Source: Octopus bimaculoides
Lineage: Eukaryota
Assembly: GCF_001194135.2 (NCBI RefSeq)
Contig: NC_068983.1
Location: forward strand, 135,335,853 to 135,393,580
Direction: 5' to 3'
DNA length: 57,728 bases
In this document: positions 32,388 through 57,472 of the stretch, piece by piece
Position numbering within the stretch: the first letter of the stretch is position 1
Layout: each line of letters opens with the position of its first letter
Position numbers and translations under genes: made by a program
The notes under the pieces: generated by a model
The model's database searches: none
Told to the model about the DNA's origin: nothing
What the model saw: only the letters and a program-made list of their open reading frames with translations

Positions 32388-33413
32388 TCATACTTTTTGA
32401 AGATTTGTATTTTTACTGTCATGTGCAGAAATAAAACTAATGGGATATGGTCCTGAATTTGATGGCTGAGGTAATTCTGTATTTGAAGATATCAAACTGG
32501 AGATCTTTATCACATCAGAATTATCACTGAGACTGTCTTCATTTATATTTCCCGTAGCAGATGTAACTGAAATTAATTGCAGTTCTTTTTGATTATCAGA
32601 ATCTTTATCACAATCTTCTGAATGCTGTGAACAAGTCTCTTCAGATCTACAGGTATCAGATATATTGATGCTATCACTGGAATCAATATTAACAACATTG
32701 TCTTTATTGATATTTCCATGAGTGGTACTGGCAGCAGGTTTTAACCGAACATTATTTTTATAACTGGAAGTATGAATATCCACAGAAAATTCTTCAATAC
32801 TGCTTTGATTGTCTTCATGACTGCAGGGTTCCATTTTTAACTGTAGGGTCTTTGGGTTGATGGCAGGCTCTGTCTCTGGTTCCACTTCAGTCTTGATATC
32901 GACAATCTGGTCTGTAACCATATTTTCTGCAGATCTTACATCAGAACCAGAAGTTGTATTGGATGTAGATGTTGATGCAATGGTAACAGCAGCATCAGCT
33001 TGCATGTTAATATTGTTGTAATTATTTCTAAATAACTTCATTAGCATAGAATTTTGTACCTCGTTAGTGTCTCCTTGTGTTTTAGAAGGAAATAGTCCTG
33101 ACAAAGAACAAGGTTCTGCCAATAAAGGTTCCACCACATCAGATAAAATATCTTTTGTCTTAGCTTTGTTCAATTCCTTACAACAAAGATCTTCAAAATC
33201 TTTCATTTCTAATTTTTCAGCAATAATCTTCAGTTGGATTAGAATTTCTTCATTCAGATCTAAAATACCACTGTACATGTATTCTGCAAATGCTAAAAGT
33301 CCTTCTTTACTGACTGAACTTGGAAAGACCACTTTGGGAAATGAACCTCTTAACGAATGATGGAGAGCTGGCAGCAGTTTTGGACACACAGCTCCTAAAA
33401 CCATTTTATGGAC
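32388..33413 (-). CDS. STPR-BTB copy A exon 4 (BTB core VHKMVLGAVCP...FAEYMYSG...LKIIAEKLEMKDFEDLC plus low-complexity tail)
   Basis: ttttcag|GTC acceptor, phase 0; BTB/POZ consensus (HK.VL.A.S/C, F..YMY.G, A..L.M..L...C); open to TGA at 32388-32390. Confidence 0.88.
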   Translation of the reverse strand, partial: VHKMVLGAVCPKLLPALHHSLRGSFPKVVFPSSVSKEGLLAFAEYMYSGILDLNEEILIQLKIIAEKLEMKDFEDLCCKELNKAKTKDILSDVVEPLLAEPCSLSGLFPSKTQGDTNEVQNSMLMKLFRNNYNNINMQADAAVTIASTSTSNTTSGSDVRSAENMVTDQIVDIKTEVEPETEPAINPKTLQLKMEPCSHEDNQSSIEEFSVDIHTSSYKNNVRLKPAASTTHGNINKDNVVNIDSSDSINISDTCRSEETCSQHSEDCDKDSDNQKELQLISVTSATGNINEDSLSDNSDVIKISSLISSNTELPQPSNSGPYPISFISAHDSKNTNLQKV

Positions 33414-34431
33414 CTGAAAACATATAAAATACATCTGGAATAAATCTAACAAAAATTACAATGATCCTATTTCACCTCACAGTAAAATAAATTTGTAATT
33501 TATACACATTAAATATCCTTTCACCCATTTAATATTTGCAAAGATCATTCAACTGGAGCCTGTTATTGAATTTAGGATAATCACAAAGTTTTACTGACAA
33601 AGTTATCCTAATACATTTCATTGTAGCAATATTGACTAAATTCTGACTGAAAAAAATTTCAGAGTAGCACTGAAGTAGGGTATTGATAGCATTGAAACTG
33701 AAATTAAAAAGACATGACATTTGGAGAAGTATCAGAACGAATTTCTGTCCCTGTGTAAAGATCAATTCAAATAGAGCATGTGTAAAAGTTATGCTGTAAG
33801 GCAGTAAGATACTGACAATGAATGTAGAAGACCCATTGTAGCTGACAAGTAACAAGCTGATTGATATATATTGCTAATTTGTAAAAAATGCTAAATACAT
33901 GAGTTGAGACAGTTACATAGCATCTTAGTTATCGATTGATATATGACAGGAAAGACAACTATACAGGTTTACATATATAATGGCAATAACTGTTGCTTAG
34001 TGAGTAAAAATGTGTAGTAAGTTACTGGTGGAAGGTACATACGAGATAATATTAGGTAGAAGAAATTAGGATGTCGTTGGAAGAAATTACACAGATTCAA
34101 GACAAAAGGAAAAGGCTGTATGAATGAAATCATAGGGGTGAATTATGAACTACATTAAATATTTTAAAGATTGGTAGAATCATTAGTGTCAGATAAAGTT
34201 TTTTGCAGCTTTTAGTTGTAATATTTTATGTTCTGAGTTTAAATCCTGCTAAAGTCATCTTTGCATTTCATCTTCCCAAAATTGATAAAATGAAGTTGCT
34301 GTGCAGAACTGAAGCTGATTTAATTATATCCATTCCACAAAATTTTAGCCTTGTGCATATGTTTGAAATTATTATAATTACTATATTACAACTATAATTA
34401 TAGTTGCATTAAAATTAAATTTATGACATAC

Positions 34432-34609
34432 CAATATATTTGTAGTACCATTACTGATGTATGAGTCACACAAACGTCCTGCTTCCCACATGGAAAATAG
34501 ATTGGACATCACTGCTGTTTGATGATTTGGAACCACTAAAATGCGTTTCTCCTGAACAGGAGGTATAGCTGATTGTGGATGAAGTAAGATTTCACTGGAG
34601 ACAGAATGG
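34432..34609 (-). CDS. STPR-BTB copy A exon 3 (BTB N-terminal part, HQTAVMSNLFSMWEAGRLCDSYI)
   Basis: tttaaag| acceptor (alternative ctccag| at 34594) and TTG|gtatgt donor; 178 nt, phase 2 to 0; the H...L..M....LCD motif is the typical start of a BTB domain; near-identical block at 47484-47646. Not in the ORF track. Confidence 0.85.
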
Positions 34610-35754
34610 CTTTAAATACAAAAACATAAAACACATAACTAGTTAGATAACAGTCAACAGTAACATCAAGTATACCCATTAATAAATTCAAACAATACAA
34701 AGTGTTTGTTAAAGATCTCTGGACATTGCACACAACACCATTTGCTTCTGTTTGCTTGACTGACAAAAAGGTTTCATTCTTACTTCTTGTATGGGTGTTC
34801 AACTATAAGGGCATTCAACTCTAAGAACATTTGTTCCAACCAAATAGTGGGTTGAGGAATAAATTCATGAGCATTTTTCTCAAATTTAAAAATGCACACA
34901 GAAATAAAATTCAATGGCAAAATGTCTTATTTATTTAAAAGAGAATTTTTTGCTCTACAAGATAGTGTACAGTGTACCCCCACTAATTCACGGTTCAGCA
35001 TTTGCAGACCCGGTTATTTGTGGAATCATAAATATCATCTGTGATTTTTTATGGCATTTTTACGTGGCAATATATACTTTTCCACACTTTTTAAGGCTAA
35101 ACTATTAATAATAATATACCGTATTTGTCAGTTTACTGGACGCCCCTTCACAGCAGAAGATCCCTTTGATTTGAATAGCCATGCATCATGTTGCTTGATT
35201 TTTTTTAGATACGAGTACACTGTATCTTGTATCTCTTATTTCTGCTTTCAATCAAAGCTTGCTAATTAGTATAGCAACTATCAGCGCATTTTTTAAAATC
35301 ATCATTACATTTGATCATACACAATATTTATTTCAACAGGATAATTTTTAAGGTCACGAGCTAATATAGCACCATTGAAATTAGGTCACTTACTGGTCCC
35401 TCCCTCCCCTTCTCTCTCACTCACTCACTCTCTCTTATTATTATAGTATAGGTAATACAAACTAAATTTTTCAAAACCATGATTATTTTTAATCTCGACA
35501 TCGCTCAATACATGGTCACAAACAGCGTTTTCTTTACCATATTGTCAGTGGCGATAGAAAATGGTGCCTTTACATCAATATGGAGCAGCAAAACAAATGG
35601 TTCAGCTCTGACAAACAAGTGACTCTACAAGCAAAACAAGACCTTCATCCTTGAAAGACCATGTGGTGTGTATGGTGGGACTGGGAAGGCATAATTCATT
35701 ATGAACTGGTTGAGTGCAATCAAACTTTTAAAGAAGATGATCTAAGATACTCAC

Positions 35755-35980
35755 AACACTGCATTAGTTCTGGTTTTGCATAATTTGGAGTTTGCTTTAT
35801 TAGAAGTGTAGACTGAGATCAATTGGTTCCTCTGTGCTCTGGTTGTTGTTTTGGTTTTCTTTTTCCAATTTGCACCATTTCCAACAGAGACTTTTTGCAA
35901 TTTTCTTGTTTCAACACAACGAAGTTGAGAAGTGGGAATGGAATTAAGTCCTGATTTTTCAACAAGAGCTTGAAACTTTT
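35755..35980 (-). CDS. STPR-BTB copy A exon 2 (linker)
   Basis: ttatttttacag| acceptor and TT|gtgagt donor; 226 nt, phase 1 to 2, matching both neighbours; KFQALVEK...CKTRTNAV; paralogue at 50636-50846. Confidence 0.8.
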
Positions 35981-36879
35981 CTGTAAAAATAAGAATTACT
36001 TTCAAGTAAATTTTTTTCTGGATGGAAACAATTAAAGTGTAATAATTGGAAATATTAAGTCCTATTTTTACAGAATTCATATTTCTTGTTTCAGTGTTAA
36101 TTTTGATTTTAAAACTTCAAAGATATCTAGTTTTTTTTTTAAGTCATCATATCCCTTGTCAAAACGCTATACTATGTTCTCCTTTCCTCTCTTTAAATTC
36201 AATAAATATCAATATTTCAAACTTTGGTTTAATCTTTCAATAATATATCTAAGACATTTTCAAAAGAACAGGCATTAATATTTTGGAAATAGTAGTTATG
36301 AATGTTGCAGAAGAAGAGGTAAGCTCTCGGAGAGCTGGATCCACGAGCTGATATCCTTTATTTACATTAATCTCATTCAGAAAAACATGAGATAACTTCC
36401 ATTTACTCTCTCTTTAAAAAAATCCAATCCCCATGACTGTGAAAATCAATAATTTAGAAATAATGTTTGTAGGTTCTTCATAATTACTTACTGTTTAGGG
36501 ATCAACAACTTTAAAACTCAGAATGCCTTTGCTGTTCAATCACAATCTAATATGCCACTTCCTAATTTCTTGATAAGAAAACCATTAAAATTCCTATTGT
36601 TTAACATTATCACTTCCCCTCTACCACCTTTATTCATCACTCACAATATCCACTCCTACATACCTCTGCTCTCCATCTCTGTGCATCCCTTTCTCATACC
36701 CATTCCACACACTGAACATCATCTCACTATCTCTCATCTGTCTACAGTTTTATTATACTGTTTCTCTTCATCAACCTCTTTTCGTACTGCCATTTATCAC
36801 CTCCTGCTCCCTGACCCACTCCTATTTTCTTCCCCTTCCCCTCCAAACTGATAGTCACCATTGACTACATGTCTACCTA

Positions 36880-37096
36880 TACTCTTTTACTCTTCTACTT
36901 GTTTCAGTCATTTTACTGTGGCCATGCTGGAGCACCACTTTTAGTCAAGCAAATCGACCCCAGGACTTATTCTTTGTAAGCCTAGTACTTATTCTATTGG
37001 TCTCTTTTGCCAAACCGCTAAGTTACAGGGACGTAAACACACCAGCATGAGTTGTCAAGCGATGTTGGGGGGACAAACACAGACACACAAACATAT

Positions 37097-37153
<57 letters not shown>

Positions 37154-37292
37154 TACGACGGGCTTCTTTCAGTTTCCGTCTACCAAATCCACTCACAAGG
37201 CTTTTGGCGGCCCCAGGCTATAGTAGAAGACACTTGCCCAAGGTGCCACGCAGTGGGACTGAACCTGGAACCATGTGATTGGTAAGCAAGCT
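36880..37292 (-). mobile_element. tRNA-derived SINE with internal (CA)/(TA) tract, CORE-like segment
   Basis: gaagacacttgcccaaggtgccacgcagtgggactgaacc; related copies at 12255-12545 (+) and 27310-27450 (-). Confidence 0.7.
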
Positions 37293-39037
37293 GCATTCAA
37301 CTCTGCCCTCATCACTAAACATCTTTCACTCTCCTTTCATACTTTCATGAACTTGACCATCCACCTTTCCTGATCTTCTATCTCTGTTCTCTTTCATTTC
37401 CTCCTTTTATCTTGAGGATATGCCCTGACACAAAATAACCACCATCTTTTCCTCTTTTTCTTGCTGAAGTTGCCATGTATCTCTTCTATAATTTATTAAG
37501 ACACCTGTTCTTGTCTTTCTATCACATTTTAACCTCTCAACACCTTACACCCCCAACTCAGTCAAGAGGATTTGTCTTCCAAGTCATTTAGTGACCTCAC
37601 TAGTGTTGGTACCATGAAAAGCACACTGTACACTTTATAAAGCGGTTGGCATTGAGAAGGGCATCCAGACATAGAAACCATGCCAAAGCAGACATTGGTA
37701 CTCAATAGTCCTCCAACTAGTGAGATTCTGTTAAACCATCCAACCCATGCCAGCACAGAAGACAGACGTTAAATAATGATGCGATGATGCTGATGGAGTT
37801 ATCTCCTGAAACAGTCACGTAATCTGCTTCATTAAAACGTTTTAAAACAGTGATTAATAGGTGTTAAAGTATATATTATTTCTATTTGGAATATATAATT
37901 TCTAGCTATATATTTAATGTCCATAAATAAATCTATAGCTCCTCATACACATAACATCATTTGGCTTAATTTCAATTTAAAGCTAAAATTAGTTTACATT
38001 TTTGTATGTTCTAGAGTTTCATTCTTCGTCTTTGCACACCTTCACACACGTCTTACATATAAATGCATTAAATGATTACAACACTAATGTAATTTTTAAT
38101 TTCTTGTGTTTCGAATAAAACTAATAATAATAAAAACTTAAAAAATAGAGGGTGCGAAAATGACTGATTTCATTCATACACTTTTGATGGAACGTAAGGT
38201 AGTATCAACAAAATTTATGATAACCATATATANNNNNNNNNNNNNNNNNNNNNNNNNNNNNNNNNNNNNNNNNNNNNNNNNNNNNNNNNNNNNNNNNNNN
38301 NNNNNNNNNNNNNNNNNNNNNNNNNNNNATTTCTGGTGTGACAAAAAAATGTTTAACCTACATAAAAAACTCAACATAAATAATCAATGTATGTTGTTAT
38401 TTAGATTTGCATAGTCGCGTCACGGAGCAATACTGAAACTGAAAGTGACTTCATAACTGTTTGACGTGGAAATCAGTAATAAACTCGAAAAGTGCATCGC
38501 TATTCCAAATGTTTACTTTAACATAACAACTTCGAGAATATATTAGAATGCAGTATAAAATTACATGAATTGATTATGAGCCCTTGCTACTTTTACGCGA
38601 CTCCTGCGGAATTTTTAAAACTTTTGCCATGAGGAGTTGATGTTGAGGAAGAAAAAGAAAGGACATCAATACGATTATCCTCTCACACACATCGTGAGAT
38701 GAAACAGAAAATTAAAGAAGTACTCTTCAAAATATCATAGGATATATATATGTGTCCAGCTTATCTAAACCCAAATGTCAAAAATTAATCCTCATTAGAA
38801 CATCAATACTGAGATCTTATAATGATATAAAATCTGTTTTCGTAAAAACAGTAAATGAGATTATGTGACATTGACGCCGTTATCTTGGACGCTAGCCAAA
38901 TGGTTTACAACTTGGACAAGAAGCTGTCACGGAATTGCCGGCATGGTTTGTTTACATTAATAGTGTTAGAATAAAGAAAATTAGATATGCTAGTTATTAT
39001 CACCCTCAAATGAATCAAAAGTTCATAGGACAGATAC

Positions 39038-39533
39038 CAGGATCGTGATGCATCTGCTCCAGGTAATGGCTTTCTTGGTCATCGTAACAGTTGGTCAGGG
39101 CGATCTTAATGCCATTAGCAGTCTGCTTTCGGCCTCGCGCCATTTTAGCCACTTGTGTATTATGACAATTTGGCTCCGAAGTACGCTTGTTCTTTGCATA
39201 TTCGGCGAGTTTCTTAAGTCTTTTCTTTCTTTCCTCAGACGTTTCTCTGGCACGCCTCCTCATTTCGCTCTCAGACAGTTTGCGAAGCCGATTTGCTCTC
39301 TCTTCTGCCGTTTCCTTAGCCCGTCTCTTCCGTGCATTTACGGACAGCCTTTTAAGTCTCTCATTTCTCTGTTCAACTGTTTCACTTCGTCGCCGTTTCC
39401 ATTCATTCAAAGATAATTTCATCAGTCTTTGATCTCTCTCTAAAGGTGTTTCATTAGCTCTTTTGACTCGTTCACGCTGTCGCCTGGCATCTCGTTTTTC
39501 TGCTTCAGTCTTGTATTTTCTCGGCCTTGCCAT
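39038..39533 (-). CDS. STPR-BTB gene copy A, coding exon 1: four 23-aa STPR-type repeats (ETxxxRxxRLxxLSxxxxxRRxx)
   Basis: ATG at 39533; 165 codons +1 nt, then donor G|gtatct. Repeats ETPLERDQRLMKLSLNEWKRRRS / ETVEQRNERLKRLSVNARKRRAK / ETAEERANRLRKLSESEMRRRAR / ETSEERKKRLKKLAEYAKNKRTS are each exactly 23 aa (nt 39177-39452). Paralogous exon at 53191-53659. Confidence 0.85.
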
Positions 39534-40479
39534 TATCTGTAACTTTAATCGGATTTCCTAAGAAACGAAGTGATGCGACTTAGAAGATAATTGATGTAGC
39601 GATATCCGAGGTTAGACAGGTAGTGTATTCTTCGTTAAGCTAAACTAATGCATAATAAATTAACTAAATTATAGCATAAATATATTGATAGTAAAGATGA
39701 AGGGACATCAAAGATAATTAAATAGCACTTTTCTTTTACCCTTTTAAAGGGATTTGTTTTCGGTAGGTTCCGTCAGTTTCCGAGATCCGTGGTTTATGAC
39801 ACGAGGGTAAATATGACACTTAAAGCCATATTCCAAAAGAAGTGAAGTAGAGGGAGGTAATTATCCATTTCTGTTTTAATTTGTGTTACTGATGCGGCGG
39901 ATAATTTTCCCGTAGATAAATAATAATGATAATAAATATACAAGCTGAAGGTTAGTATTCATTTGTTGTTCCGTTCAACCAATTGAAGCACTTGGTTCAT
40001 ACATTGATATCTTTTTCTTTCTCCTTCTATTTTTCTTTGTCTTTCTTTTGTAAAATATATTCCTGTTCATATTTTGAATTTTATGTATGACACCAGTGCA
40101 ATACCAGTAACAATGAATTTGGTAAATTGTTAACATACAATTATAAGGGTTGTCAACTAACTTGAATGAACATGCTGGAAAAAGAAATTGCTGAAACACG
40201 GGAAAATAGTCGTAAATGCTACAAAATTTAGCATAGAATTTAGTCTCAGTTAGGATAGGTGTTGTTTTGCTTTCAGCTGAGTAGGTTTGTATATACCGAA
40301 TTATTGCCAGATTTTTAAACTTTAAAAATAGGTGTTCCATGACGCAAAAACTAATTTGGTACTTGAGTGTTTACAGGTTTTGGTTTGTAAATATAGCGAA
40401 GGCTGTATTTATTTTAGCACATCCCTATAGTGTATTTTATTTACGAGAGATATTTTCCCATCATTTACAAAACTTGGAA

Positions 40480-44694: not shown

Positions 44695-45738
44695 TTATAC
44701 AGCTGTATAGTCACCGTTATTCACAGAAAATAAACTAATAGGGTATGGTTTAGAATTTGATGTTTGCAGTTGTTTTGTATTTGTAGGCATTGTACTGGAG
44801 GTCTCTACCAAATCAGAATTATTGCTGAGATTGTCTTCATTTATATTGCCTGCCACAGATGTTATTGAAATTAACTGTAGTTCTTTCTGATTATCAGTAT
44901 CTTCATCACAATTTTCTGTATGCTGTGATAAACAAGTCTCTTCAGATTGAGGGGCATCAGATATATTGATGTTATCACTGGAAACCATATTCAGATCATT
45001 TTTATACTGGTTGTCTGAATAAGTAACTGTTAAGTCATTGTCTGTATTGATATTTCCAGAAGTGGCACTGGTAGCAGGTGGTAGATGATGGTTATTATTG
45101 GAACTAGTGTTACCAATATCCATGTATAATTCTTCTTGAAAACTATGTTGGTTTTCATCAGGACTATAAGGTTCTATTTTTAACTGTAGAGAGTTGTGGT
45201 TTGTTGCAGACTCTATCTCTGGTTCTACTTCACTCTGGATGTCAATGATCTGATTTGTAGTCATAATTTCTTCAGACCTTACATTAGATGTACTAGATCC
45301 AGTACTAACAAGAACACCAGGCTGCATGTTATTACTATTGCTGTAATTATTTCTAAACAAGTTAATTAACATAGAATTTTGTATTTTGTTAATGTCTCCC
45401 TGTGTTCTGGAAGGAAATAATCCTGACAAAGAACAAGGTTCTGCCAACAAAGGTTCCACCACAGCTGATAAAATATCTTTTGTCTTAGCTTTGTTCAATT
45501 CATTACAGCAAAGTTGTTCAAAATCTTTCATACTTAATCTTTCACCAATAGTCTTTAGTTGGACTAGAATTTCTTCATTCAGATCTACCACACCATTGTA
45601 CATGTATTCTGCAAATGCTAAAAGTCCCTCTTTACTGACTGAACTTGGAAATGTCACTTTAGGAAATGAACCTTTTGATGAATGATGGAGAATTGGCAGC
45701 AATTTTGGACACACAGCTCCTAAAACCATTTTATGGAC
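44695..45738 (-). CDS. STPR-BTB copy B exon 4 (BTB core plus tail)
   Basis: ttttcag|GTC acceptor; BTB motifs as in copy A; open to TAA at 44695-44697. Confidence 0.88.
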   Translation of the reverse strand, partial: VHKMVLGAVCPKLLPILHHSSKGSFPKVTFPSSVSKEGLLAFAEYMYNGVVDLNEEILVQLKTIGERLSMKDFEQLCCNELNKAKTKDILSAVVEPLLAEPCSLSGLFPSRTQGDINKIQNSMLINLFRNNYSNSNNMQPGVLVSTGSSTSNVRSEEIMTTNQIIDIQSEVEPEIESATNHNSLQLKIEPYSPDENQHSFQEELYMDIGNTSSNNNHHLPPATSATSGNINTDNDLTVTYSDNQYKNDLNMVSSDNINISDAPQSEETCLSQHTENCDEDTDNQKELQLISITSVAGNINEDNLSNNSDLVETSSTMPTNTKQLQTSNSKPYPISLFSVNNGDYTAV

Positions 45739-47483
45739 CTGAAAACATATAAAATACATCTGAAATAAATCTAGCAAAAATTATTGATTCTATTTTTTTC
45801 TCACAGCATAATTAACTTTACTCTATAACTTTGTAGTGTTCACTCACGCAATTTCTTATGACAAAATTATTCTAATACATTGACTAAATTCTGACTACAG
45901 AAAATTTCAGAGAAGCACTGAAGTGGGGCATTGATAGCATTCGATTACTATCGTAAACAGCAGTAGCTTTCTTCAACTGAAGACACCAGTCGTTGATTGG
46001 TTGAAATTACCCAAATATGACAACTTTAACATGAAATAACTTCTAAAATACGAAATTTTGACAAAAACGTTCAGAATAAACCATGTTCTACATGAGAAAT
46101 TCTACCAGTATTCGAAGTTTCAAGCTGTTTAGTTAAAAAAAAATCTGATCGAGATGGAATAGATCCCAATTTTTTTTACAGAAATGATATAACCCCTTCC
46201 TCATCTACAAACAACCTAGACACCAACTACCAAACCTAAATTCTATCAACAGAGATCTCAAAAATGCATCTTCTAGTGGGACCATGTCAAACTTGTTTCT
46301 TAAACAGCAAAAACCTCATTAGAAAACATCAGTGCATCACAATCCACTTGAACAAGAGTAACGCTAAACTAGAGCCCTCACTGTTACCTCATGTTAGGTC
46401 TCTCTATTATTGAAAATTTCTTGGTGAAAGCTAGAGCCACATCTCAAAAACTAGCCTTTCCTTGAAGGTCAGAAAATACTTCATGCCCCATCAATTGCCG
46501 AGCACCATACCCAGTCCTTCAGAACATCCACCCTATCAGCTCCTGTAGGTATTGACTTGCAACATTTTAAGCAGAACCAAATCGTCCAACCCATGCTAGC
46601 ATGGAAAGTGGACGTTAAACGATGATGATGATGATTAGCTAATTAGTCTTAGTGTTCTCACCTCAAGTATCTCTAAAGTAATGCAGACAGCCAATAACAA
46701 TGATACTCTCTAACAACTTGAATCTATCTCTCACTTTGGTGATGAGCAGCATGGCTTCCAGAGCCATTTTTATTGGTAACCTACTCTCTTACATCACTCA
46801 TCAGGGGCTCTTGCTTTAAAGAAGTTTGGTGAAAGCAATGTTGTTATTCTAGACTGGCTCTTCTCTTCAGAGCTAGAAAGTATTTCAGCCTCCAGTAACT
46901 GCTGAAACTGTACAAGATTCAAGTGAGGCTCAAAATGCTGTATTGCTTTCACAAACTAGGAGAGTGCAATTACGCTCACAGGCATCAAAGAGCCACTCAA
47001 CTATTTGCTCCAGCAGTTTGGCCCACATGCATGCTGTCTCCTCTGTCTTTTTTATCACTAATATAATGCCCTTGGTAACTCTGCATTGGCTGGACCCATC
47101 CTTATTCTTGACATCTCAACATCCACACCTTTCTTCCTCACAAAATCAGACCTCTAGAATCTTTAACCCAATCTTTCTTGCAGGTGTTGAACTACAACAG
47201 TTTAAATGGAATGTCAACAAAATCAAGCTCTCTGGTCTTGGAGAGCCCACAAAGGTCATGGTAATAGCTCCTCCCACACTAGAGTTAGATCAAGATAAAC
47301 GAGGCTAAAAAAAATTAGGAAGGCATTCAGAACATTGAAATTCATGGAGGAAAAGAACACAGAACCAAGTTAAATTATACACTAAATATAGGATGTAATT
47401 TAACATATATATAATTTGAATGTATTTAATATTTATTATATTACAATTGTTATAATTACATTAAACTTAATATTATAACATAC

Positions 47484-47646
47484 CATTATAGTTGTAGTAC
47501 CATTACTGATGTACGAGTCACACAAACGCCCTGCTTTCCACATGGAAAATAGATTGGACATCACTGCTGTTTGATGATTTGGAACCACTAAAATGCGTTT
47601 CTCCTGAACAGGAGGTACAACTGATTGTGGATGAAGTAAGATTTCA
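47484..47646 (-). CDS. STPR-BTB copy B exon 3 (BTB N-terminal part)
   Basis: tttttgtatttgaag| acceptor and ATG|gtatgt donor; 163 nt, phase 2 to 0; HQTAVMSNLFSMWKAGRLCDSYISNGTTTIM. Confidence 0.85.
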
Positions 47647-49450
47647 CTTCAAATACAAAAACACATAAAAACAGTTAATAGTAACATCAAATATTTTAGA
47701 ACATGTAAATAAATTCAAACACAGAAACATTATCATCATTCAAAGTCTATGTTCTACAATGGCATTGGTTGGATGGCCTGCAGGATTCAACACATCGAAA
47801 ACTGCATCATGTTCCAATGTCAGCCATGGCAAAGTTTGTATAGCAAGATGCCCTTCCTAACACCAACCATTTTACTGTGTGTACTTGGTGCATTTGTTCA
47901 TGGCATCAGCACTAATGAAGTCACTTGTAAGAGTAGGATCCCTTTCAACTGAGAGGGGCTAGAGTAGAGAGGGAGGTGGCTTTTTGTTGTGGGATGAGGG
48001 GTTAATAAGCGAAATGTTTCCAGGTAGTAAGAATGATAAGTGGTATTAGGGAAAAGCTAATAGAAGATACCTGTTCTGCTAAGAACAGTTCAGTTAAGAG
48101 AGATGATGGTAAGTGGTGGAGATGTCTTAAAGAAGAAATGGTGATAGAGGAGAGACAGTTGGGTATGTTGTGCTTTCAGATATGGGTAGGTCTTTTTGAG
48201 AACCACATATTGCCAGTCATCCCAGTTCTTTGTTATTTTGTCTGTGTGGTTCAAGGTCCTGAGATCAGCCTTTACCACTTCATTCCATGTCTTCTTGGGT
48301 CTCCCTCTTCTGCAAGCTCCATCCACATTCATCATCATCGTTTAACATCCTCCTTCCATGCTGGCTGTCCTCAGCCATATGCATCACATACCAGTACATT
48401 CTTCTTTCTTGCACACACCTGAGTTCTCTAGTTTTTTCTCTCAAACCAATTGTACCTTGTTATTCAGCACATCCAACAGAGCATGCAAGCTTCATTTCTT
48501 TCTAAGTCTTCTAAAGTCCTCTGCATTTTAGGCCCATATCTCACTATGCAGCACCACAGTTCTAATAAAAGCATTATACAATCTATCTTTAGGTCTAAGG
48601 GAAAAGATCTTTGTTACCAGACGTAATAGAAGCTCTCTGAACTTTTCCAACCTTTTCTTACTCTGGCTACTATACTTTTGGTGCAACCACCTCCCTTGCT
48701 AACCACATCCAAAGTAACAAAAGCTATCAACTGTTTCTAGTGACCTCAGGAGGTCTAAAGCCGAGACAAAATTTAGCGCAGACAAGCTAGCTAGTTATGA
48801 GAAATAATTGGCTCAAACAGGGGTTCAGAAAACTGTTGAACGCGACCTTATCTGAAGGTGGAGATTGGTTGGGTTGCACTCTGGCGTGAGATAGAGTAAA
48901 ATACGCCAATACCAACCAATCAAAGTGGTGGACATAAGGGTCCAAAGAAGCGGCCGAAGGCTAGCTGTTATCTGCTATGTTCATGTGTATATAATAGAGA
49001 GAGAGAATAGCTTCGCTACACCTCTATAGATTCACCTATGAGGACTAGATCATCAGCCTATAGATGTATGGGCAGCATGTCTTAAATACTTCCATGACAG
49101 TCTGTAGGACTGAGGACTAAATTTGATAGATACTTACCTTCACATCAGATTCATCACTGAATCCTCACTTTACTTACTAAATCTTTGTACATAACTTGTA
49201 TAGCACCCACAAGTCATTTGCTATACTTCGTTTCTTTGGAGACCATCAAATTACTGAACATGGTACCATGTCAAATGCCTTCACCAAGTCAATGAATGCC
49301 AAGTATAGTGGTTTACTCAAAGCCAAATATTTCTCTTGTAGTTGCCTCACAAGAAAGATTGCATCCATGTTACTTCTTTTGGGCACAAAGCCAAATTGCA
49401 TCTAATGTATATCTCCCCCAATTATGGATCAATTGTGCTATAGCGGAGAC

Positions 49451-50067
49451 GGACTATATGTAATCTGAACCTTTCCCACCTTTATTTATTTTTTTTATTT
49501 TTTTACGGAATCCCACGTTTTAGGCTATGGAGATTCCAGTTCTGAAAAAATTTTTTTCAAAAATCTCAAATTCAAAATTTCGAACCCCCCACTCCCATTT
49601 CCTCATTTCAAAATATTTTCCGGAAATTTTTTTTTTTAGAAATGTGTAAAAAAATACGGAGATTATGATTCTGAAAAAAAATTGTTTGAAAAATTTCAAT
49701 TCCCCACCACCACCAAGCAGGCTATTTACATGTTAGAAATAACAGCCAAATCTCACAANNNNNNNNNNNNNNNNNNNNNNNNNNNNNNNNNNNNNNNNNN
49801 NNNNNNNNNNNNNNNNNNNNNNNNNNNNNNNNNNNNNNNNNNNNNNNNNNNNNNNNNNNNNNNNNNNNNNNNNNNNNNNNNNNNNNNNNNNNNNNNNNNN
49901 NNNNNNNNNNNNNNNNNNNNNNNNNNNNNNNNNNNNNNNNNNNNNNNNNNNNNNNNNNNNNNNNNNNNNNNNNNNNNNNNNNNNNNNNNNNNNNNNNNNN
50001 NNNNNNNNNNNNNNNNNAAAAAAAAAAAAAAAAAGGGGGGGGGAAAGGTTTAGATTACATATAGTCC
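49451..50067. mobile_element. MITE-like element with 27-bp terminal inverted repeats
   Basis: ggactatatgtaatctgaacctttccc / gggaaaggtttagattacatatagtcc; interior partly N. Confidence 0.55.
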
Positions 50068-50635
50068 ATCTGGACCGTTTCATGACCTTCAAAAACTGAT
50101 CCAGTAGTTCGATTCCACTATAGCTGCTTCTCTCTCAGGCATCTCGTTTGCTTTTGCAGCAGTTTACAGTGATACTACTATGCCTATCATGGGGTATGAT
50201 ACCTTCATGTATCTCACTAGATATTTTGAGCATCTCTGCAACTGTCACTGATGGACCCACAGCTTTCACTCTCTTCAAACCTTGCTTCATCTACCATGTC
50301 AACTTGATTTTCTGGTTCCTCTGTATGGTCAGGATGAGATAGTCCCTTCTTTATCCCATATATTCTCCATATTCAACAGCCTCACAATAGCACTTCCATA
50401 CCACTTTCTTGTCCTGCACATCAATGGTGAGCATGCATTCATCATTCTGAATACAGAATGTTTGTTGACAATCTCTAGACAATGCACACAAAACTATTTG
50501 TTTTAGATTGGTTGACTGACGAAAAGTTCCATTCCTACCATTTATTTGGATGCCTTGTTGTAGGAAGGGCATACATCTCTAAGAACATTTGCTCAAATCA
50601 AATAGATAACATATGTTAACAAAATTCTATTTCAC

Positions 50636-50846
50636 CTGTTATTTTTGCATAATTTTGAATTCACTTCATTAGATGTGTTGACTGAGATCAATTGGTTTCT
50701 CTGTGCTCTAGTTGTTGCTTTGGTTTGCTGCTTCAAATTTGCATCATTTTCAACAGTGACTTTTTGTAATTTTCTTGTTTCAACAGAATGTTGAGAAGAC
50801 TGAATGGAATTAAGTTCTGATTTTTCAATGGGAGCTTCAAATTTTC
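50636..50846 (-). CDS. STPR-BTB copy B exon 2 (linker)
   Basis: ttttgacag| acceptor and AG|gtgaaa donor; 211 nt, phase 1 to 2; homologous to 35755-35980. Confidence 0.78.
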
Positions 50847-51673
50847 CTGTCAAAACATCAAAGTTACAAGTTACATCCAAATAAAGATTATTCTGACTGA
50901 AAACAATAAACAAGTATTTTGAAATATTACTCTATTTTCACAAACTTTACATTTCCCATTTTAGTGTAAATTTTGTTTTTAAAGTGTAAAATATTGTATC
51001 TATAAGCTCAAAATTAATATAGCTCATCTTCACTATTTCCCCAAACCATCAACGTTCATTTTATCATTATCAAAATTAAGAATTTATATGTATATTGGTA
51101 TCATAAACCAGTTCAAAGTATTCTACTCGCCGTCTAATCCGTTAATCACGGCTGTTCAACGTTTTTATATTAGGTAAAGGCAGTAGCCATCTATCAACGT
51201 CTTTCGACACTATGCCTCATTTTCGTACTCAATACAAATTAAGATACCTATATTTCAATCTATTATTTACCATTGTAGAAAGGAATTAATGATAGGATAT
51301 TATAATTCATAACAATTGGAAATTTCATTGAATTTTCCAAAGTAAATGAAGCTGTTGCCAATGAATCATAATCCAATGTAGAGTTATTGTTATTTATGCC
51401 CTTTCATCAAAAATGTACACGTTGTGCCACATCCAACATGAGACTATGTGAGAGTCAAGCCTTCATTAGGAGTGGACAGAATGCATACCGAGAATGTTGA
51501 CATACAAATGGCACCAGCTGCGAATCAAAGGTGAAATTACATCAGAACATAATCGCAATATTTATATTAGAATGTAGTATAAATTGAGTAAAGTTTATGA
51601 ACACATTGTTACTTTTACGATTCCTATGGTATTTTGACAACTTTTCATTCAGAGTTGATATATTAATATGATA

Positions 51674-52880
51674 TACACCTCGACTTACGACCGAATTTCG
51701 TTCCGACTGGCAGGTTGTATGTCGGATTAATATTTTTCAGCCCTATTTTCATTCAAACGGGTTATAAAAATATAAAACACAAAAATTTAATCCATAATTA
51801 TTGTTCATAATGTGAAAAATACATAATATGTACTCTATTGTACTATAAACAAAAATTAAAGGGTTTTCCGAATGACAGATAGGCATCGAGGTGAAGTTAC
51901 TTGCTTCTCTGGCGGCTATAATTTGGCGCCACTACAGATAAGAAAAGGCTTCAGCTTAGAACGAGCGGCATTACCACCAAGCAACCAAGTTAACCTATCC
52001 TTAAGAGCTTTGAATTCTGGCATCTTTTTTCCTTCTTGATGTATGTACGTACGTACGAGTAGGCCTTCGTTTCCATAGCAAGTCTGTTTCGTCTACGTTG
52101 AATATATGTTCTGGTAGATAACCTTCAATTAATTCGTCAAAACTATCACCGAATTTCTGGGCTCCTTCTTCATCTGCACTTCCTGCTTCTCCTATAACAC
52201 ATACATTATGTAAAGCAAATCTTTTTTTAAAACGTATAAACCACCCTTTACTAGCCTGAAAATCTTGTGTGTAATCGTCTCCGGAGCGTGATTTTAAAGT
52301 CTGAAACAAACTTTTAGCCTTTGTTTGTACTGTAAGAAGGCTGATGGGTGTTTTTTTCTGTATTAAACCTTTCATCCACATGAATAACAATTTCTCCATT
52401 TCATGGATGGGTCCCTGTCGTTGTTTGGTTAAAATTGTAGACTTCATAGGCACAGAACTTTTCACAGCTTCACGAATTCTTTCTTTGCCCTTAAGTATTG
52501 TTGATACCGTGGAATGCGATAACTTCAAGTCACGTGCTATTGTATTCACTTTCTTTCCGCCTTCATACTGCCGAATAATCTTCATTTTACAGTCTAAATC
52601 AATAGCCTTCCTTGGTTTCTTAGCTGGTGCATCTATAGATGAAAGCATTTTCCTTTTACCAATCATTTTAGAGGTATCTCAGATACAATTGTAACAAATC
52701 CACACACAACGGATGCTTGAAAGCGACTGAGTGAGAGACGGTGACAGGCAGTGGGTGCCTGGGACTGAGGGACGCATGCGTTGCCAGATGCTGCCAGTCA
52801 TCGTACACGCAGCTGCCCAACGTCCGAAAATCGATTTTTAAAATTTATTTATTGTGGTCGTAAGTCGAGAAGGTGTGTGT
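51674..52880 (-). mobile_element. Tigger/pogo DNA transposon, truncated, in intron 1 of copy B
   Basis: ORF 52001-52666 with CENP-B-like HTH, ASKGWFIRFKKR and IFNVDET; inverted ends ctcgacttacgacc (51679-51692) / ggtcgtaagtcgag (52856-52869). Confidence 0.88.
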
Positions 52881-53190: not shown

Positions 53191-53659
53191 CAGGATCTTG
53201 ATGAATCTGTTCCAGGTAACAGTTTTCGTGTTCATTATAACAGTTGGTCAGAGCGATCTTAAAGCCATTAGCAGTCGGCTTTCGGCCCCGCGGCCTTTTA
53301 GCCACTTGAGTATTATGGCAATTTGGTTTTGAAGTACACTTGTTTGTATTTTTGTTTCTTTTCTGACTCGATTCTCTGGCACGTCTTTTCATTTCGTTCT
53401 CAGATAGTTTTCGAAGCCGATTTGCTTTCTCTGCCGTTTCCTTAGCCCGTCTCTTTCGTGCATTTAAAGACAACCTTTTAAGTCTCTCCTTTCGCTCTTC
53501 AATTGTCTCATTTCTTCGCCGATTCCATTCATTCAAAGATAAATTCATCAATCTTCGATCTCTCTCTAAAGGTGTTTCATTAGCTCTTTTGATTCTTGCA
53601 CGCTGTCGTGAGACCGCTCGTCGCTCTGCTTCAGTCTTGTATTTTTTTGGCCTAGGCAT
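53191..53659 (-). CDS. STPR-BTB gene copy B, coding exon 1 (STPR repeats; 3rd and 4th shortened)
   Basis: ATG at 53659 (MPRPKKY); 156 codons +1 nt; the same G|gtatct donor as copy A. Confidence 0.82.
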
Positions 53660-56246: not shown

Positions 56247-57472
56247 CTAGCAGAGGCACTCGGCGTTGCCCGGGAATGAAATTGTTGCTTATATACTGGA
56301 AGAAAAAAAGCAAAATATGCCGTATAGAAATTTGAGGACATTCTGTAGATGGACTCTCAGATGAATGATGGCTGGGCGCCACTCATGAATGTGAAAATTG
56401 AAGATGCACCAAAACCGGGTTAAAGAAAATAGGGTTAACCCTGACCCTAACCCTTCCATTTAGGATTGCATGTGAAGGTTATGAAGAGGTCTGGTCTGCC
56501 ATAGTGTCTAACATATGTCATGGCATCTTGTGTGCGCTCATGCATGTATCTTGGGCTTCCTGTGAATGATCAGCTGGCCCATGTTGTTGACATCATGATC
56601 ATTCAGCACTGCATCTTGCAGGTGTGCATATGATTCCACTCTCAGTTTCTTCTGGTTCAGTCTCAAGAAGAGTAATCTTTCACTTCCAATTTTTGCATAC
56701 ATGTCAACAATGAACTGACTGAACAGATCTCTATAATGTAGAATGTGGTTTGAATCTTGACTCCTGACCATGATGTGGAATGCATAGAAGTCACTGGATG
56801 AGTTTGTCTGTCTCATGTCAATGTGGTAAGTATCTTGTCCATAACAGAACAGTAATGGATATTGTAGTGCATCATAGAATCTGTGTGTTTCTGAAATNNN
56901 NNNNNNNGGATCTTGAAAGTTTGCATGAATCCTGGCTCAGTTATATCTTTTGTGGCCCCAAATGATGTCATCTGTAGAGCAGCATTGTACTGTCTAATTT
57001 CGTTTTGAAAGTGCTTGGAATCTTGATCAGTTGATGATAACAGTTTCTTCAATAGCTCTGGAGGTTGGGGGACTGCAGGGAGTTTAACCTTTCCACCACT
57101 GCAGCACAGTGCAAGTGTCTCTCCAGGCCACTTCCTTGCTTTACAATGAATGCACTCAGTTGTCATTGCACCAATGGAAACTCTAGTATCATCCGACTAA
57201 TGAACTGCTGGATCATAATTGAAAGCTGCTTCATAGAAGTTGCTTCTCTGAGCTTTTGCAACTGCTCTTCGTTCTGCATTGGAGATCTTATTCCTTGTCA
57301 GTCGTGCATACCTCTGTTCATCACTTTCAGATGCTCTGGCTTTTGTAGTGCACAGTCTGTTCTTTTCTTGGTGTGCTTCCCTTTCTGCAGCTGTCTCTCT
57401 TTTTCTGGACAGAGACGTTCTTTTGGCTGACCTTGATTTTATAGACAAATTTGACATTTTCCTTCTAGGCAT
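56247..57472 (-). mobile_element. Helitron, internally deleted and degraded (RepHel N-terminal part only)
   Basis: Fragments MPRRK...RETAAEREAHQEKNRL...ESDEQRYARL...AAFNYDP; C..CKARKWPGE...CCSGGKVKLP...PPELLKKLL...F...IRQYNAALQMTSFGA; LFSQFIVDMYAKI.SERLLFLRLNQKKLRVESY..L.DA. 3' end is a GC hairpin (cccgggcaacgccgagtg) followed by CTAG|T at 56247-56250. HUH Rep motifs and helicase are absent. Confidence 0.9.

What the first reader, a model, noticed from the sequence alone, without database searches (positions are those of the whole stretch)
32388..39533. STPR-repeat plus BTB fusion protein: an apparently unusual transcription-factor architecture
Seen: four exons join in frame with canonical GT/AG sites and matching phases (496+226+178+1026 nt = 641 aa plus stop). 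The N-terminus has four exact 23-aa repeats of the ETxExRxxRLxxLS type, followed by a linker, a complete BTB domain (LCD...VHK.VL...YMYSG) and a disordered tail with no zinc fingers, Kelch or BACK domain. Known: 23-aa STPR repeats form the DNA-binding domain of silkworm FMBP-1 and occur in vertebrate ZNF821; BTB domains dimerise and recruit co-repressors or Cullin-3 and normally sit N-terminal to C2H2 fingers. Inference: this is an inverted-architecture DNA-binding BTB factor in which STPR replaces zinc fingers. I know of no described STPR-BTB protein.
Basis: partly seen in the sequence, partly recalled or inferred. Interest (0 to 1): 0.9.

Follow-up and report, generated by a model that had tools for sequence, protein, structure and literature searches.

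The report
Octopus STPR–BTB gene with swappable heads
This is a real, conserved octopus gene that joins an STPR DNA-binding repeat to a BTB dimerisation domain, and it belongs to a cephalopod gene family in which one BTB "body" is spliced to interchangeable DNA-binding "heads", most of them taken from transposons.

Summary
The four minus-strand exons (39533-39038, 35980-35755, 34609-34432, 33413-32388) join in frame with GT/AG sites. They give 641 aa, identical to RefSeq XP_014774311.1 (Octopus bimaculoides LOC106872012, "uncharacterized"). Pfam finds STPRs (E=9e-18) and BTB (E=1e-7) and nothing else. The assembly gap lies inside intron 1. Its flanks are collinear with a gap-free O. sinensis orthologue, where they sit 39 nt apart.

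The gene is not a one-off. The window holds a second tandem paralogue, LOC106872008. Its RefSeq isoforms splice one BTB body to an STPR head or to either of two pogo/CENP-B-like heads. Across cephalopods the same body carries THAP, FLYWCH, CG-1, Tc1/mariner, FAR1, DUF3504 or integrase heads.

Exon sizes and intron phases are conserved as far as Argonauta. dN/dS is 0.13 for the STPR part and 0.28 for the BTB part. STPR repeats also occur in Helitron transposases, and a Helitron fragment lies in the window, so the STPR head may be Helitron-derived.

It is most likely a dimeric DNA-binding regulator. A 2023 paper catalogued octopus CENPB-BTB and THAP-BTB proteins; I found no paper describing STPR-BTB or the alternative-head layout. 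I rate it a new variant of a known kind, of moderate interest.

The parts
39038..39533 (-). Gene A (LOC106872012) coding exon 1: ATG at 39533, STPR head, 496 nt, ends in phase 1 before GTATCT
   Evidence: identical exon size in O. sinensis
39177..39452 (-). Four 23-aa STPR repeats (aa 28-119). Glu1, Thr2, Arg6, Arg9 and Leu10 are kept in all four
   Evidence: Pfam E=8.9e-18; in-register alignment to FMBP-1 5d23; repeat table; helices at pLDDT>90
35981..39037 (-). Intron 1, containing the assembly gap 38233-38328
   Evidence: flanks collinear with gap-free O. sinensis, about 39 nt apart there
35755..35980 (-). Gene A exon 2 (226 nt): disordered linker. It is the first exon of the constant body, the same junction to which all three heads of the paralogue are spliced
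34432..34609 (-). Gene A exon 3 (178 nt): end of linker and first part of the BTB domain (BTB starts about 34525)
32388..33413 (-). Gene A exon 4 (1026 nt including stop): rest of BTB (to about 33117), then a disordered tail with psi-K-x-E motifs (IKTE, LKME) and a C-terminal PYPISF motif
   Evidence: family consensus
53191..53659 (-). Gene B (LOC106872008) STPR head exon, used in isoform X3
   Evidence: exact reconstruction of P0004 from the window
52057..52666 (-). Gene B alternative head exon, used in isoform X1: CENP-B_N + HTH_Tnp_Tc5. It is the N-terminal 203 codons plus one base (610 nt) of a pogo/Tigger-like transposase, cut at a GTACGT donor just after the first catalytic Asp motif NVDET
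   Evidence: transposase frame continues past the donor
44695..50846 (-). Gene B constant body: exons 50846-50636, 47646-47484, 45738-44695 (linker, BTB, tail)
56449..57472 (-). Degenerate Helitron fragment lying between gene B head 1 (outside the window) and its STPR head. It holds an STPR-like N-terminus, a CxHC...CC motif, then Helitron_like_N

Best explanation
Window 32388-39533 (minus strand) is the intact Octopus bimaculoides gene LOC106872012.

The protein has four parts. An N-terminal STPR domain has four canonical 23-aa helices plus one degenerate helix. A roughly 150-aa disordered linker follows. Then comes a ZBTB-type BTB/POZ domain. Last is a roughly 240-aa disordered acidic, Ser-rich tail with two psi-K-x-E (SUMO-consensus-like) motifs and a family-conserved C-terminal PYPxxLF motif.

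Most likely mechanism. The STPR helices lie along the DNA major groove as in FMBP-1. The BTB domain makes homodimers, and possibly heterodimers with paralogues and isoforms, so two heads are presented together. The BTB and tail recruit co-regulators, most plausibly co-repressors, to the bound sites.

The gene is one unit of a tandem cephalopod family built as 'variable DNA-binding head exon + constant three-exon BTB body'. Three STPR-BTB genes sit head to tail in the order LOC106872009, LOC106872008, LOC106872012. The middle one uses three alternative heads. At least one head is demonstrably the 5' part of a pogo-like transposase captured through a splice donor inside the transposase ORF. The STPR head was probably captured the same way from the N-terminus of a Helitron transposase.

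Shown: the gene model, domains, fold, conservation, purifying selection, tandem organisation, annotated alternative heads and the pogo origin of one head. Inferred: DNA binding, dimerisation, repression, and the Helitron origin of the STPR head.
For: Gene model and identity to XP_014774311.1.

Domains: Pfam STPRs and BTB; STPR in register with solved FMBP-1; BTB nearest to Miz-1, gigaxonin, ZBTB9 and PLZF by sequence.

Structure: AlphaFold gives pLDDT>90 for the helices between aa 10 and 118 and 85-96 for most of aa 270-399, with the linker and tail below 50. Foldseek matches BCL6, PLZF and ZBTB9 BTB domains with TM up to 0.83 and rmsd 2.2 A.

Conservation: exon sizes 496/226/178 are identical in O. 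sinensis. Intron phases 1, 2, 0 are conserved to Argonauta hians. dN/dS against Argonauta is 0.13 for STPR (dS 1.3), 0.28 for BTB and 0.71 for the tail.

FMBP-1 residues: the stabilising and backbone-contact residues Glu1, Thr2, Arg6, Arg9 and Leu10 are kept in all four repeats, and Arg20 in three of the four (Lys in R4) (compared with PMC4856987).

Family and heads: RefSeq isoforms sharing one body with different heads. P0004 and P0007 were rebuilt exactly from the window with heads 53659-53191 or 52666-52057. The head order CENPB#2, STPR, CENPB#1 is conserved in O. sinensis. Three tandem genes occur in both species. A census of 50 family proteins gives THAP 10, STPR 8, CENPB 7, CG-1 5, FLYWCH 4, DUF3504 3, DDE_3 2 and others. 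All named members are cephalopod.

Spliced transcript: a 901-aa THAP-BTB ORF is contiguous on a 3.5-kb Logan contig of a sequencing run, which indicates a spliced head-body transcript in a decapodiform.

pogo capture: the head ends at NVDETDLLW, and the frame reads on past the donor into 'TYIHQEGKKMPEFKALKDRLTWLLGGNA'.

Helitron link: STPRs + DUF6570 + OTU + Helitron_like_N + PIF1 occur in one protein (P0081), and STPR + DUF6570 in P0033. The HELIANO paper lists STPRs as a stable Helitron domain. The in-window Helitron N-terminus aligns in register with STPR repeats 1-2 of gene A (E=1e-3) and, from residue 2, with the head of another octopus BTB gene (E=8e-6). Its homologues carry Pfam STPRs.
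Against: No RNA-seq reads or cDNA spanning the 39038|35980 junction could be examined. Support for the exon 1-exon 2 join is comparative (conserved phases, selection, RefSeq Gnomon models in several species), not direct.

DNA binding, dimerisation and repression are untested.

Residues that contact bases or thymine methyls in FMBP-1 differ here: Tyr16 becomes N/N/S/Y, Leu21 becomes Arg, Met13 becomes Leu. So the AT-rich preference of FMBP-1 may not transfer.

The Helitron origin rests on weak similarities between short, compositionally biased repeats. The Helitron fragment in the window is a recent O. bimaculoides-specific insertion, not the source. Most STPR-only relatives carry no transposon domain, so capture of a host STPR gene is not excluded.

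Gene A itself has only one annotated head. The pogo head exon of gene B is absent at the collinear site in gene A.
Confidence: 0.72

Rival explanations
1. Transposon-silencing reading, which overlaps with the best explanation. The family would be a cephalopod analogue of KRAB zinc-finger proteins. A BTB repressor scaffold acquires DNA-binding heads from transposases, so each isoform recognises the ends or internal sites of the transposon family it came from. STPR would target Helitrons, CENP-B-like heads pogo, THAP heads P-like elements, and so on, and would silence them.
For: Most identified heads match Pfam families that are transposase- or integrase-derived, or that papers treat as such. 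One head is shown to be a captured pogo N-terminus. The BTB is of the co-repressor-binding ZBTB type. The family is tandemly duplicated and lineage-specific. A Helitron fragment, a Tc1/mariner fragment and a pogo-like remnant lie in this same window.
Against: No binding data exist. The STPR and BTB parts are under steady purifying selection back to Argonauta (dN/dS 0.13 and 0.28), not the rapid turnover typical of an arms race. Many domesticated transposase DNA-binding domains regulate host genes instead.
Confidence: 0.2
2. Cullin-3 substrate adaptor. The BTB domain binds CUL3 and the STPR region and tail select substrates or chromatin sites for ubiquitination, rather than the protein acting as a classical transcription factor.
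For: BTB domains of the KLHL and gigaxonin type are among the sequence hits (gigaxonin E=1e-6).
Against: No BACK/3-box, Kelch or MATH domain is present. The best structural matches are ZBTB transcription-factor BTBs such as BCL6, PLZF, ZBTB9 and Miz-1. The partner domain is a known DNA-binding domain.
Confidence: 0.08
3. Gene-model or scaffolding artefact. The STPR exon and the BTB exons belong to different transcription units that were joined only because phases happen to match and a scaffold gap lies between them.
For: Exon 1 and exons 2-4 are on different contigs of the scaffold (gap 38233-38328). No junction-spanning reads were available to me. An in-frame ATG at 36080 could in principle start a head-less product.
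Against: The gap flanks are collinear with a gap-free orthologue. The same four-exon structure with the same phases occurs in three paralogues and in three genera. The STPR exon is under strong purifying selection and has no stop-terminated stand-alone form beyond 7 read-through codons. The same acceptor is used by three different heads in the paralogue.
Confidence: 0.04
4. Origin alternative. The STPR head was exon-shuffled from a host STPR gene of the FMBP-1 / ZNF821 kind, not from a Helitron.
For: STPR proteins are widespread host genes in animals (PMC4856987). Of 52 STPR-only relatives scanned, none had Helitron domains and one had C2H2 fingers. The best single-stretch matches are to short arthropod STPR proteins.
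Against: In host STPR proteins the domain is not at the extreme N-terminus: the FMBP-1 construct is residues 99-193. In Helitron proteins and in the octopus heads it starts within about 30 residues of the Met. All other well-identified heads in the family are transposon-derived.
Confidence: 0.35

Closest known systems
Bombyx mori FMBP-1 STPR domain (PDB 5d23/5d2q/5d2s) and vertebrate ZNF821
   Same: Four tandem 23-aa repeats, each a 2-residue linker plus a 21-residue helix. Glu1, Thr/Ser2, Arg6, Arg9 and Leu10 are kept in all four repeats and Arg20 in three.
   Different: Here the STPR is at the extreme N-terminus and fused to a BTB domain. Base and methyl-contact positions (Tyr16, Leu21, Met13) differ. 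Similarity stops outside the repeats, so it is not an orthologue.
ZBTB (BTB-zinc finger) transcription factors: BCL6, PLZF, Miz-1/ZBTB17, ZBTB9
   Same: Long-form BTB fold, with TM up to 0.83 to PLZF and BCL6 BTB domains. The likely logic is the same: a dimeric BTB plus a DNA-binding domain.
   Different: The BTB is central, not N-terminal. The DNA-binding domain is N-terminal and is STPR, not C2H2. There are no zinc fingers.
Drosophila mod(mdg4) and lola: common BTB exons plus alternative DNA-binding exons (my own knowledge)
   Same: One BTB module is combined by alternative splicing with many different DNA-binding modules, including FLYWCH. Tandem arrangement of the variable exons.
   Different: Mirror image. 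In octopus the variable exons are 5' and the BTB body is 3', so choice must be made by alternative promoters or 5' exon selection, as in clustered protocadherin or UGT1A loci. Trans-splicing is not known here. Heads are of many unrelated fold types.
Host-transposase fusion genes / transposase capture (Cosby et al., bioRxiv 10.1101/2020.05.07.082677), and octopus CENPB-BTB and THAP-BTB proteins catalogued in PMC10027918
   Same: Transposase DNA-binding domains are joined by splicing to a host regulatory domain. Gene B's CENP-B-like head is the 5' part of a pogo-like transposase with a donor inside the ORF. LOC106872008 is listed as 'CENPB BTB/poz' in that paper's supplement.
   Different: Transposon origin of the STPR head is only suggested. 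Several alternative heads share one body in one gene. The 2023 catalogue treats BTB itself as transposon-derived and mentions neither STPR, isoforms nor Helitrons.
Helitron Rep/Hel transposases with N-terminal STPR arrays
   Same: The STPR array lies close to the initiator Met (P0081, P0033). STPRs are listed as a stable HLE1 domain in PMC11417382. The in-window Helitron N-terminus aligns in register with the head.
   Different: Gene A has no Rep, helicase, DUF6570 or zinc-finger-like Helitron motif and is a conserved single-copy host gene under purifying selection.

Membership tests
STPR domain (Pfam PF21107) | Score above the Pfam gathering threshold | tested here: met
   64.9 bits against a cutoff of 27, E=8.9e-18
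STPR domain (Pfam PF21107) | Tandem repeats of exactly 23 residues with conserved Glu1, Thr/Ser2 and Arg9 | tested here: met
   Four repeats at aa 28-119, all with E1, T2 and R9, plus R6 and L10. Criteria taken from PMC4856987
STPR domain (Pfam PF21107) | Each repeat is one long alpha-helix | tested here: met
   AlphaFold helices 30-50, 53-73, 76-96 and 99-118 at pLDDT>90. This is a prediction only
STPR domain (Pfam PF21107) | Binds double-stranded DNA along the major groove | not testable with these tools
   Needs EMSA, SELEX or a structure
BTB/POZ domain (Pfam PF00651), ZBTB-type fold | Pfam gathering threshold and near-full-length match | tested here: met
   32.2 bits against a cutoff of 20.5; profile positions 4-108 of 110
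BTB/POZ domain (Pfam PF00651), ZBTB-type fold | BTB fold including the N-terminal alpha1 extension | tested here: met
   Foldseek to PLZF, BCL6 and ZBTB9 with TM 0.79-0.83 and rmsd 2.2-3.1 A. The sequence alignment starts at VPNHQ...LCD, matching alpha1 of Miz-1
ZBTB transcription-factor family | N-terminal BTB followed by C-terminal C2H2 zinc fingers | tested here: not met
   BTB is at aa 270-399 of 641 and there is no zinc-finger hit. So it works like a ZBTB factor but is not a member
Host-transposase fusion gene | The DNA-binding part is derived from a transposase | tested here: inconclusive
   Met for the neighbouring gene's CENP-B-like head. For the STPR head there are only indirect links to Helitrons
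Host-transposase fusion gene | Fusion to a host domain by splicing, kept under purifying selection | tested here: met
   Conserved phase-1 junction; dN/dS 0.13-0.28 for the two domains. No direct transcript evidence for this gene
Variable-exon / constant-exon BTB locus (mod(mdg4)/lola-like) | Several alternative DNA-binding exons spliced to the same BTB exons | tested here: met
   Met for LOC106872008 in the window (three heads) and for LOC115209549 and LOC115209547. It rests on RefSeq models. Gene A itself shows one head only
FMBP-1 / ZNF821 orthologue | Similarity extending beyond the STPR repeats, or a shared architecture | tested here: not met
   The PDB alignment is confined to aa 27-120. 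In the exhaustive profile search, hits covering both the STPR and BTB parts were few, and all that were identified are octopod

The most novel reading that the evidence does not exclude
Cephalopods have evolved their own counterpart of the KRAB zinc-finger system. In this reading a tandem array of BTB repressor 'bodies' recruits, as alternative 5' exons, the DNA-binding N-termini of the transposons living in the genome: Helitron STPR, pogo CENP-B HTH, P-element THAP, Tc1/mariner, MULE FAR1, Crypton DUF3504 and LTR integrase. Each isoform would then home to and silence the transposon family it was stolen from. BTB heterodimerisation would mix specificities. STPR-BTB would be the anti-Helitron arm.
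Probability: 0.15. Interest if true: 0.85.

Novelty: new variant of a known kind. Interest (0 to 1): 0.55.

Why it matters
BTB transcription factors and transposase capture are both well known. Here three things come together.

1. The STPR domain has been characterised in a single silkworm factor. Here it is an N-terminal DNA-binding head on a BTB protein that has been conserved across octopods.
2. One BTB body is served by several unrelated, mostly transposon-derived DNA-binding heads as alternative 5' exons. This is a mirror image of Drosophila mod(mdg4)/lola and an unusually clear case of modular transcription-factor assembly.
3. A plausible Helitron origin of the STPR head would add rolling-circle transposons to the known sources of animal transcription-factor domains.

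Cephalopods are known for lineage-specific regulatory gene expansions (my own knowledge). This family would be a further example and is directly testable: DAP-seq of the heads, and dimerisation assays of the bodies.

Interest is tempered for three reasons. The gene is already annotated. Part of the family was catalogued in 2023. No function has been shown.

Tried and rejected
1. Hidden exon in the gap, rejected. I asked whether the assembly gap hides the pogo/CENP-B-like alternative exon seen in the paralogue. The collinear position of that exon in gene A (38952-38641) is fully sequenced and lacks it. tblastn finds no CENP-B-like coding sequence in intron 1. The orthologue has only about 39 nt where the gap is.

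2. Direct transcript evidence, not obtained. The spliced protein itself could not be looked up. No Logan (assembled sequencing-run) contig encoding STPR-BTB was returned by the full-length protein search. Only a THAP-BTB contig from a decapodiform was found. The 164-aa Logan protein P0021 turned out to be an unspliced genomic STPR exon with the same GTATCT donor.

3. Word-indexed search with the STPR exon alone was uninformative: 92 candidates and 1 hit. The exhaustive profile search replaced it.

4. In-window Helitron as the source of the STPR head, rejected. It sits in a 7.7-kb interval that is 1.7 kb in O. sinensis, so it is a recent insertion. Pfam does not recognise STPR in it.

5. Stand-alone STPR gene, rejected. 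The exon-1 ORF runs only 7 codons past the donor, and the donor is conserved in paralogues.

6. STPR-BTB outside cephalopods: none was found among 1.84 billion representatives. Only 339 hits reached E<=1e-3. The hits covering both parts that could be identified are all octopod.

7. tRNA and Rfam scans of the window found nothing.

Full report
**1. The observation**

On the minus strand the four proposed exons are 39533-39038, 35980-35755, 34609-34432 and 33413-32388. Each internal boundary has a GT donor and an AG acceptor (…CTG|GTATCT, TTTTTACAG|AAAAG, …GTT|GTGAGT, TTTAAAG|CCATT, …TTG|GTATGT, TTTTCAG|GTCCAT). The exons sum to 1926 nt and translate without interruption to 641 aa plus a stop.

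Pfam finds STPRs (PF21107, E=8.9e-18, 64.9 bits against a cutoff of 27). It also finds BTB (PF00651, E=1.3e-7, aa 281-383 covering positions 4-108 of 110). Nothing else reaches E<=1.

Residues 28-119 are four repeats with an exact 23-residue period. They are not identical in sequence. phmmer aligns them in register with the four repeats of the solved FMBP-1 STPR domain (5d23, E=7.5e-11).

**2. The gap**

N 38233-38328 lies inside intron 1, so no coding base is affected. It does mean that exon 1 and exons 2-4 sit on different contigs of the scaffold.

The gap-free O. sinensis orthologous locus (L001) settles the join. Window 40839-38329 aligns to L001 8672-11240, and window 38232-37291 aligns to L001 11280-12209. 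The flanks are therefore collinear and about 39 nt apart there. The orthologue carries exons of 496, 226, 178 and 1023 nt on one continuous sequence.

**3. What the gene is**

The window is Octopus bimaculoides. RefSeq proteins of LOC106872008 can be rebuilt at 100% identity from it.

Orthologues or paralogues with the same STPR+BTB architecture are annotated in three other taxa:
- O. sinensis (94% identity),
- O. vulgaris,
- Argonauta hians (51% identity).

Intron phases (1, 2, 0) are the same in all of them, and the third exon is 178 nt in all.

Nei-Gojobori estimates against Argonauta give dN/dS 0.13 for the STPR repeats (dS about 1.3), 0.28 for the BTB region and 0.71 for the tail. The two domains are therefore maintained by selection as parts of one reading frame.

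**4. Structure**

AlphaFold2 was run with a 26-sequence family alignment.
- It predicts five consecutive helices (10-26, 30-50, 53-73, 76-96, 99-118) at pLDDT>90.
- It predicts a compact BTB fold at 270-399, with pLDDT 85-96 over most of it.
- The linker (123-268) and the tail (400-641) are below 50.

Foldseek places the folded core with BCL6, PLZF, ZBTB9 and Miz-1 BTB domains, with TM up to 0.83 and rmsd 2.2 A. Sequence search agrees, with Miz-1, gigaxonin, ZBTB9 and PLZF as best hits.

The FMBP-1 crystal-structure paper (PMC4856987) names Glu1, Thr/Ser2 and Arg9 as helix-stabilising, and Arg6, Arg9, Leu10 and Arg20 as backbone contacts. Glu1, Thr2, Arg6, Arg9 and Leu10 are kept in all four repeats here, and Arg20 in three of the four (Lys in R4). 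Positions that touch bases or thymine methyls differ: Tyr16, Leu21, Met13 and Ala17. DNA binding is therefore likely, but the ATAC or AT-rich preference need not carry over.

**5. The surroundings change the picture**

tblastn of the homologues against the window shows a second, tandem paralogue on the same strand. This is LOC106872008 ('gene B'). Its RefSeq isoforms share one body: exons 50846-50636, 47646-47484 and 45738-44695. They differ in the first coding exon:
- an STPR head (53659-53191, isoform X3),
- a CENP-B_N + HTH_Tnp_Tc5 head (52666-52057, isoform X1).

Both were rebuilt exactly from the window. A third head (isoform X2, another CENP-B-like domain) lies about 4 kb beyond the window end. 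The order CENPB#2, STPR, CENPB#1, body is the same in O. sinensis.

All heads end in phase 1 and use the same acceptor as gene A's exon 2. On the chromosome three STPR-BTB genes lie head to tail in the order LOC106872009, LOC106872008, LOC106872012. O. sinensis has the same order.

Gene A has no CENP-B-like exon. The collinear interval (38952-38641) is fully sequenced and is short.

**6. One head is a captured transposase**

The CENPB#1 head ends at …FNVDETDLLWKRRPT, with its final Arg codon split across the junction. This is the start of the pogo/Tigger catalytic domain. The donor is C|GTACGT.

Read past the donor, the frame continues as TYIHQEGKKMPEFKALKDRLTWLLGGNA… before it decays. I recognise this continuation as the usual sequence following NVDET in pogo/Tigger transposases; Pfam did not report a DDE_1 match on the read-through peptide, so that identification rests on my own knowledge. 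The N-terminal part does match CENP-B_N and HTH_Tnp_Tc5.

This fits the transposase-capture mechanism described for vertebrates (abstract of bioRxiv 10.1101/2020.05.07.082677).

**7. The family**

A profile of six STPR-BTB proteins was searched against 1.84 billion representative proteins. Only 339 hits reached E<=1e-3. Clear STPR+BTB coverage is confined to octopod clusters. Weaker STPR-like + BTB proteins also occur in octopus: P0031, P0036 'Ken-like', P0049 and P0093.

Proteins with the family-type BTB carry it centrally, behind a head. In a census of 50 such proteins the heads were:
- THAP 10, STPRs 8, CENP-B/Tc5 HTH 7, CG-1 5, FLYWCH 4, DUF3504 3, DDE_3 2,
- Integrase_H2C2 1, FAR1/ZSWIM3_N 1.

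All members that carry a source name are cephalopods: Octopus, Argonauta and Acanthosepion.

Other loci also show alternative heads on one body. LOC115209549 uses THAP+CG-1 or CENP-B-like heads. LOC115209547 and LOC106872006 use THAP or CG-1, with or without a Tc1/mariner cassette.

A 901-aa THAP-BTB ORF is contiguous on a 3.5-kb contig assembled from a sequencing run. That indicates a spliced head-body mRNA in a decapodiform.

The tail keeps two motifs across the family: psi-K-x-E-P (IKTE and LKME in gene A) and a C-terminal PYPxxLF. Their function is inferred only. The first looks like a SUMO consensus site, and the second is unknown.

**8. Where the STPR head may come from**

Among STPR-only relatives, P0081 (2069 aa) is a complete Helitron Rep/Hel protein with five STPR stretches, DUF6570, OTU, Helitron_like_N and PIF1. 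P0033 has seven STPR stretches followed by DUF6570. The HELIANO paper lists STPRs among domains stably included in canonical Helitrons (PMC11417382).

The window itself holds a degenerate Helitron fragment (about 57472-56449, minus strand).
- It has a Helitron_like_N match at E=3.7e-29.
- Its N-terminus aligns in register with repeats 1-2 of gene A (39% identity, E=1e-3). From residue 2 it also aligns with the head of another octopus BTB protein (36% identity, E=8e-6).
- Homologues of that N-terminus in spiders, flies and a moth are multicopy, and several carry Pfam STPRs.

This fragment is a recent O. bimaculoides-specific insertion and not the donor.

In Helitron proteins and in the octopus heads the array begins close to the Met. 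In FMBP-1 it lies at residues 99-193. I therefore favour capture of a Helitron N-terminus (about 0.5). Shuffling from a host STPR gene remains open (about 0.35), because most STPR relatives show no transposon domain.

**9. How it most likely works**

Shown: an intact, conserved, selected gene encoding STPR + linker + ZBTB-type BTB + disordered tail, in a tandem family with interchangeable heads.

Inferred from the two domain families: the STPR helices bind the DNA major groove; the BTB dimerises and so pairs two heads, possibly of different kinds; and the BTB and tail recruit co-regulators, most plausibly co-repressors.

Rivals are listed separately: a transposon-silencing role (compatible, 0.2), a CUL3 adaptor (0.08) and a model artefact (0.04).

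**10. Comparison with what is known, and novelty**

The protein works like a ZBTB factor but fails that family's defining layout of an N-terminal BTB with C-terminal C2H2 fingers. It contains a bona fide STPR domain but is not an FMBP-1 or ZNF821 orthologue. At locus level it resembles mod(mdg4) and lola turned around, and host-transposase fusions.

Mukherjee and Moroz 2023 (PMC10027918) noted that octopus CENPB and THAP factors carry BTB/POZ. Their supplement lists LOC106872008 as 'CENPB BTB/poz'. They do not mention STPR, isoforms, splicing or Helitrons. My searches for STPR with BTB, or STPR with Helitron, found nothing else relevant.

This is a new variant of a known kind, with interest 0.55.

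Noticed in passing
window 44695-53659 (minus), continuing beyond 57728: A second tandem paralogue, LOC106872008, lies upstream. It has one BTB body and alternative first coding exons: an STPR head at 53659-53191, a pogo/CENP-B-like head at 52666-52057, and a third CENP-B-like head about 4 kb outside the window. The head order is conserved in O. sinensis.
   Followed up: yes
window 51919-52056 (minus): The transposase reading frame continues for about 46 codons past the splice donor of the CENP-B-like head (TYIHQEGKKMPEFKALKDRLTWLLGGNA...). I read this as a remnant of the pogo/Tigger catalytic domain left in the intron. Pfam did not report a DDE_1 match on it.
   Followed up: yes
window 56449-57472 (minus): A degenerate Helitron fragment with frameshifts, one stop and an 11-N gap. 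It has an STPR-like N-terminus, a CxHC...CC motif and Helitron_like_N (E=3.7e-29). It is an O. bimaculoides-specific insertion between two head exons of gene B.
   Followed up: yes
window 41698-42184 (minus): A Tc1/mariner transposase fragment (HTH_Tnp_Tc3_2, E=5e-15) lies in the intergenic region between gene B and gene A, on the same strand as the genes. Related family members use Tc1/mariner cassettes as heads. There is no evidence that this copy is spliced.
   Followed up: partly
window 34362-34596 versus 47415-47648: Exon 3 plus about 70 nt of the following intron is 90% identical between the two paralogues, against 77-81% for the other aligned segments. dS over exon 3 plus the BTB-coding start of exon 4 is 0.12, against 0.25-0.43 in the other regions. 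This suggests gene conversion between tandem copies.
   Followed up: partly
P0002 (O. vulgaris model named LOC115209550): This protein is a chimera. Exons 1-3 are of the gene B type and exon 4 is of the gene A type. No separate A- or B-type O. vulgaris proteins were seen. It could be an unequal crossover or deletion, an assembly collapse, an annotation transfer artefact, or cross-unit splicing.
   Followed up: no
window 39555-39562 and 53675-53682 (minus); also L001, L007, L004: A conserved TTTCTTAG|GAAATC lies about 20-25 nt upstream of the STPR-head ATG in all Octopus copies. A TCTCATTTTTAG precedes the CENPB#2 head. Both look like splice acceptors, so the heads may be internal exons fed from a shared upstream 5' exon rather than true first exons. 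The sequence is not conserved in Argonauta.
   Followed up: partly
gene A protein aa 473-476, 492-495 and 621-626 (window exon 4): Short motifs in the otherwise disordered tail are conserved across the family: psi-K-x-E(P) (IKTE, LKME; SUMO-consensus-like) and a C-terminal PYP[IV][SG]LF-type motif (PYPISF here). Their function is unknown.
   Followed up: no
window 3472-4308, 13897-14341, 27287-27309, 40840-41215, 49759-50017, 55233-55771, 56898-56907: Seven further assembly gaps, none in a coding exon of either gene. At least four of them, and the intron-1 gap, persist in the chromosome-level assembly (L006). (TA)n and (TATC)n-type microsatellites flank several of them, and one lies near 31.6 kb.
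   Followed up: partly
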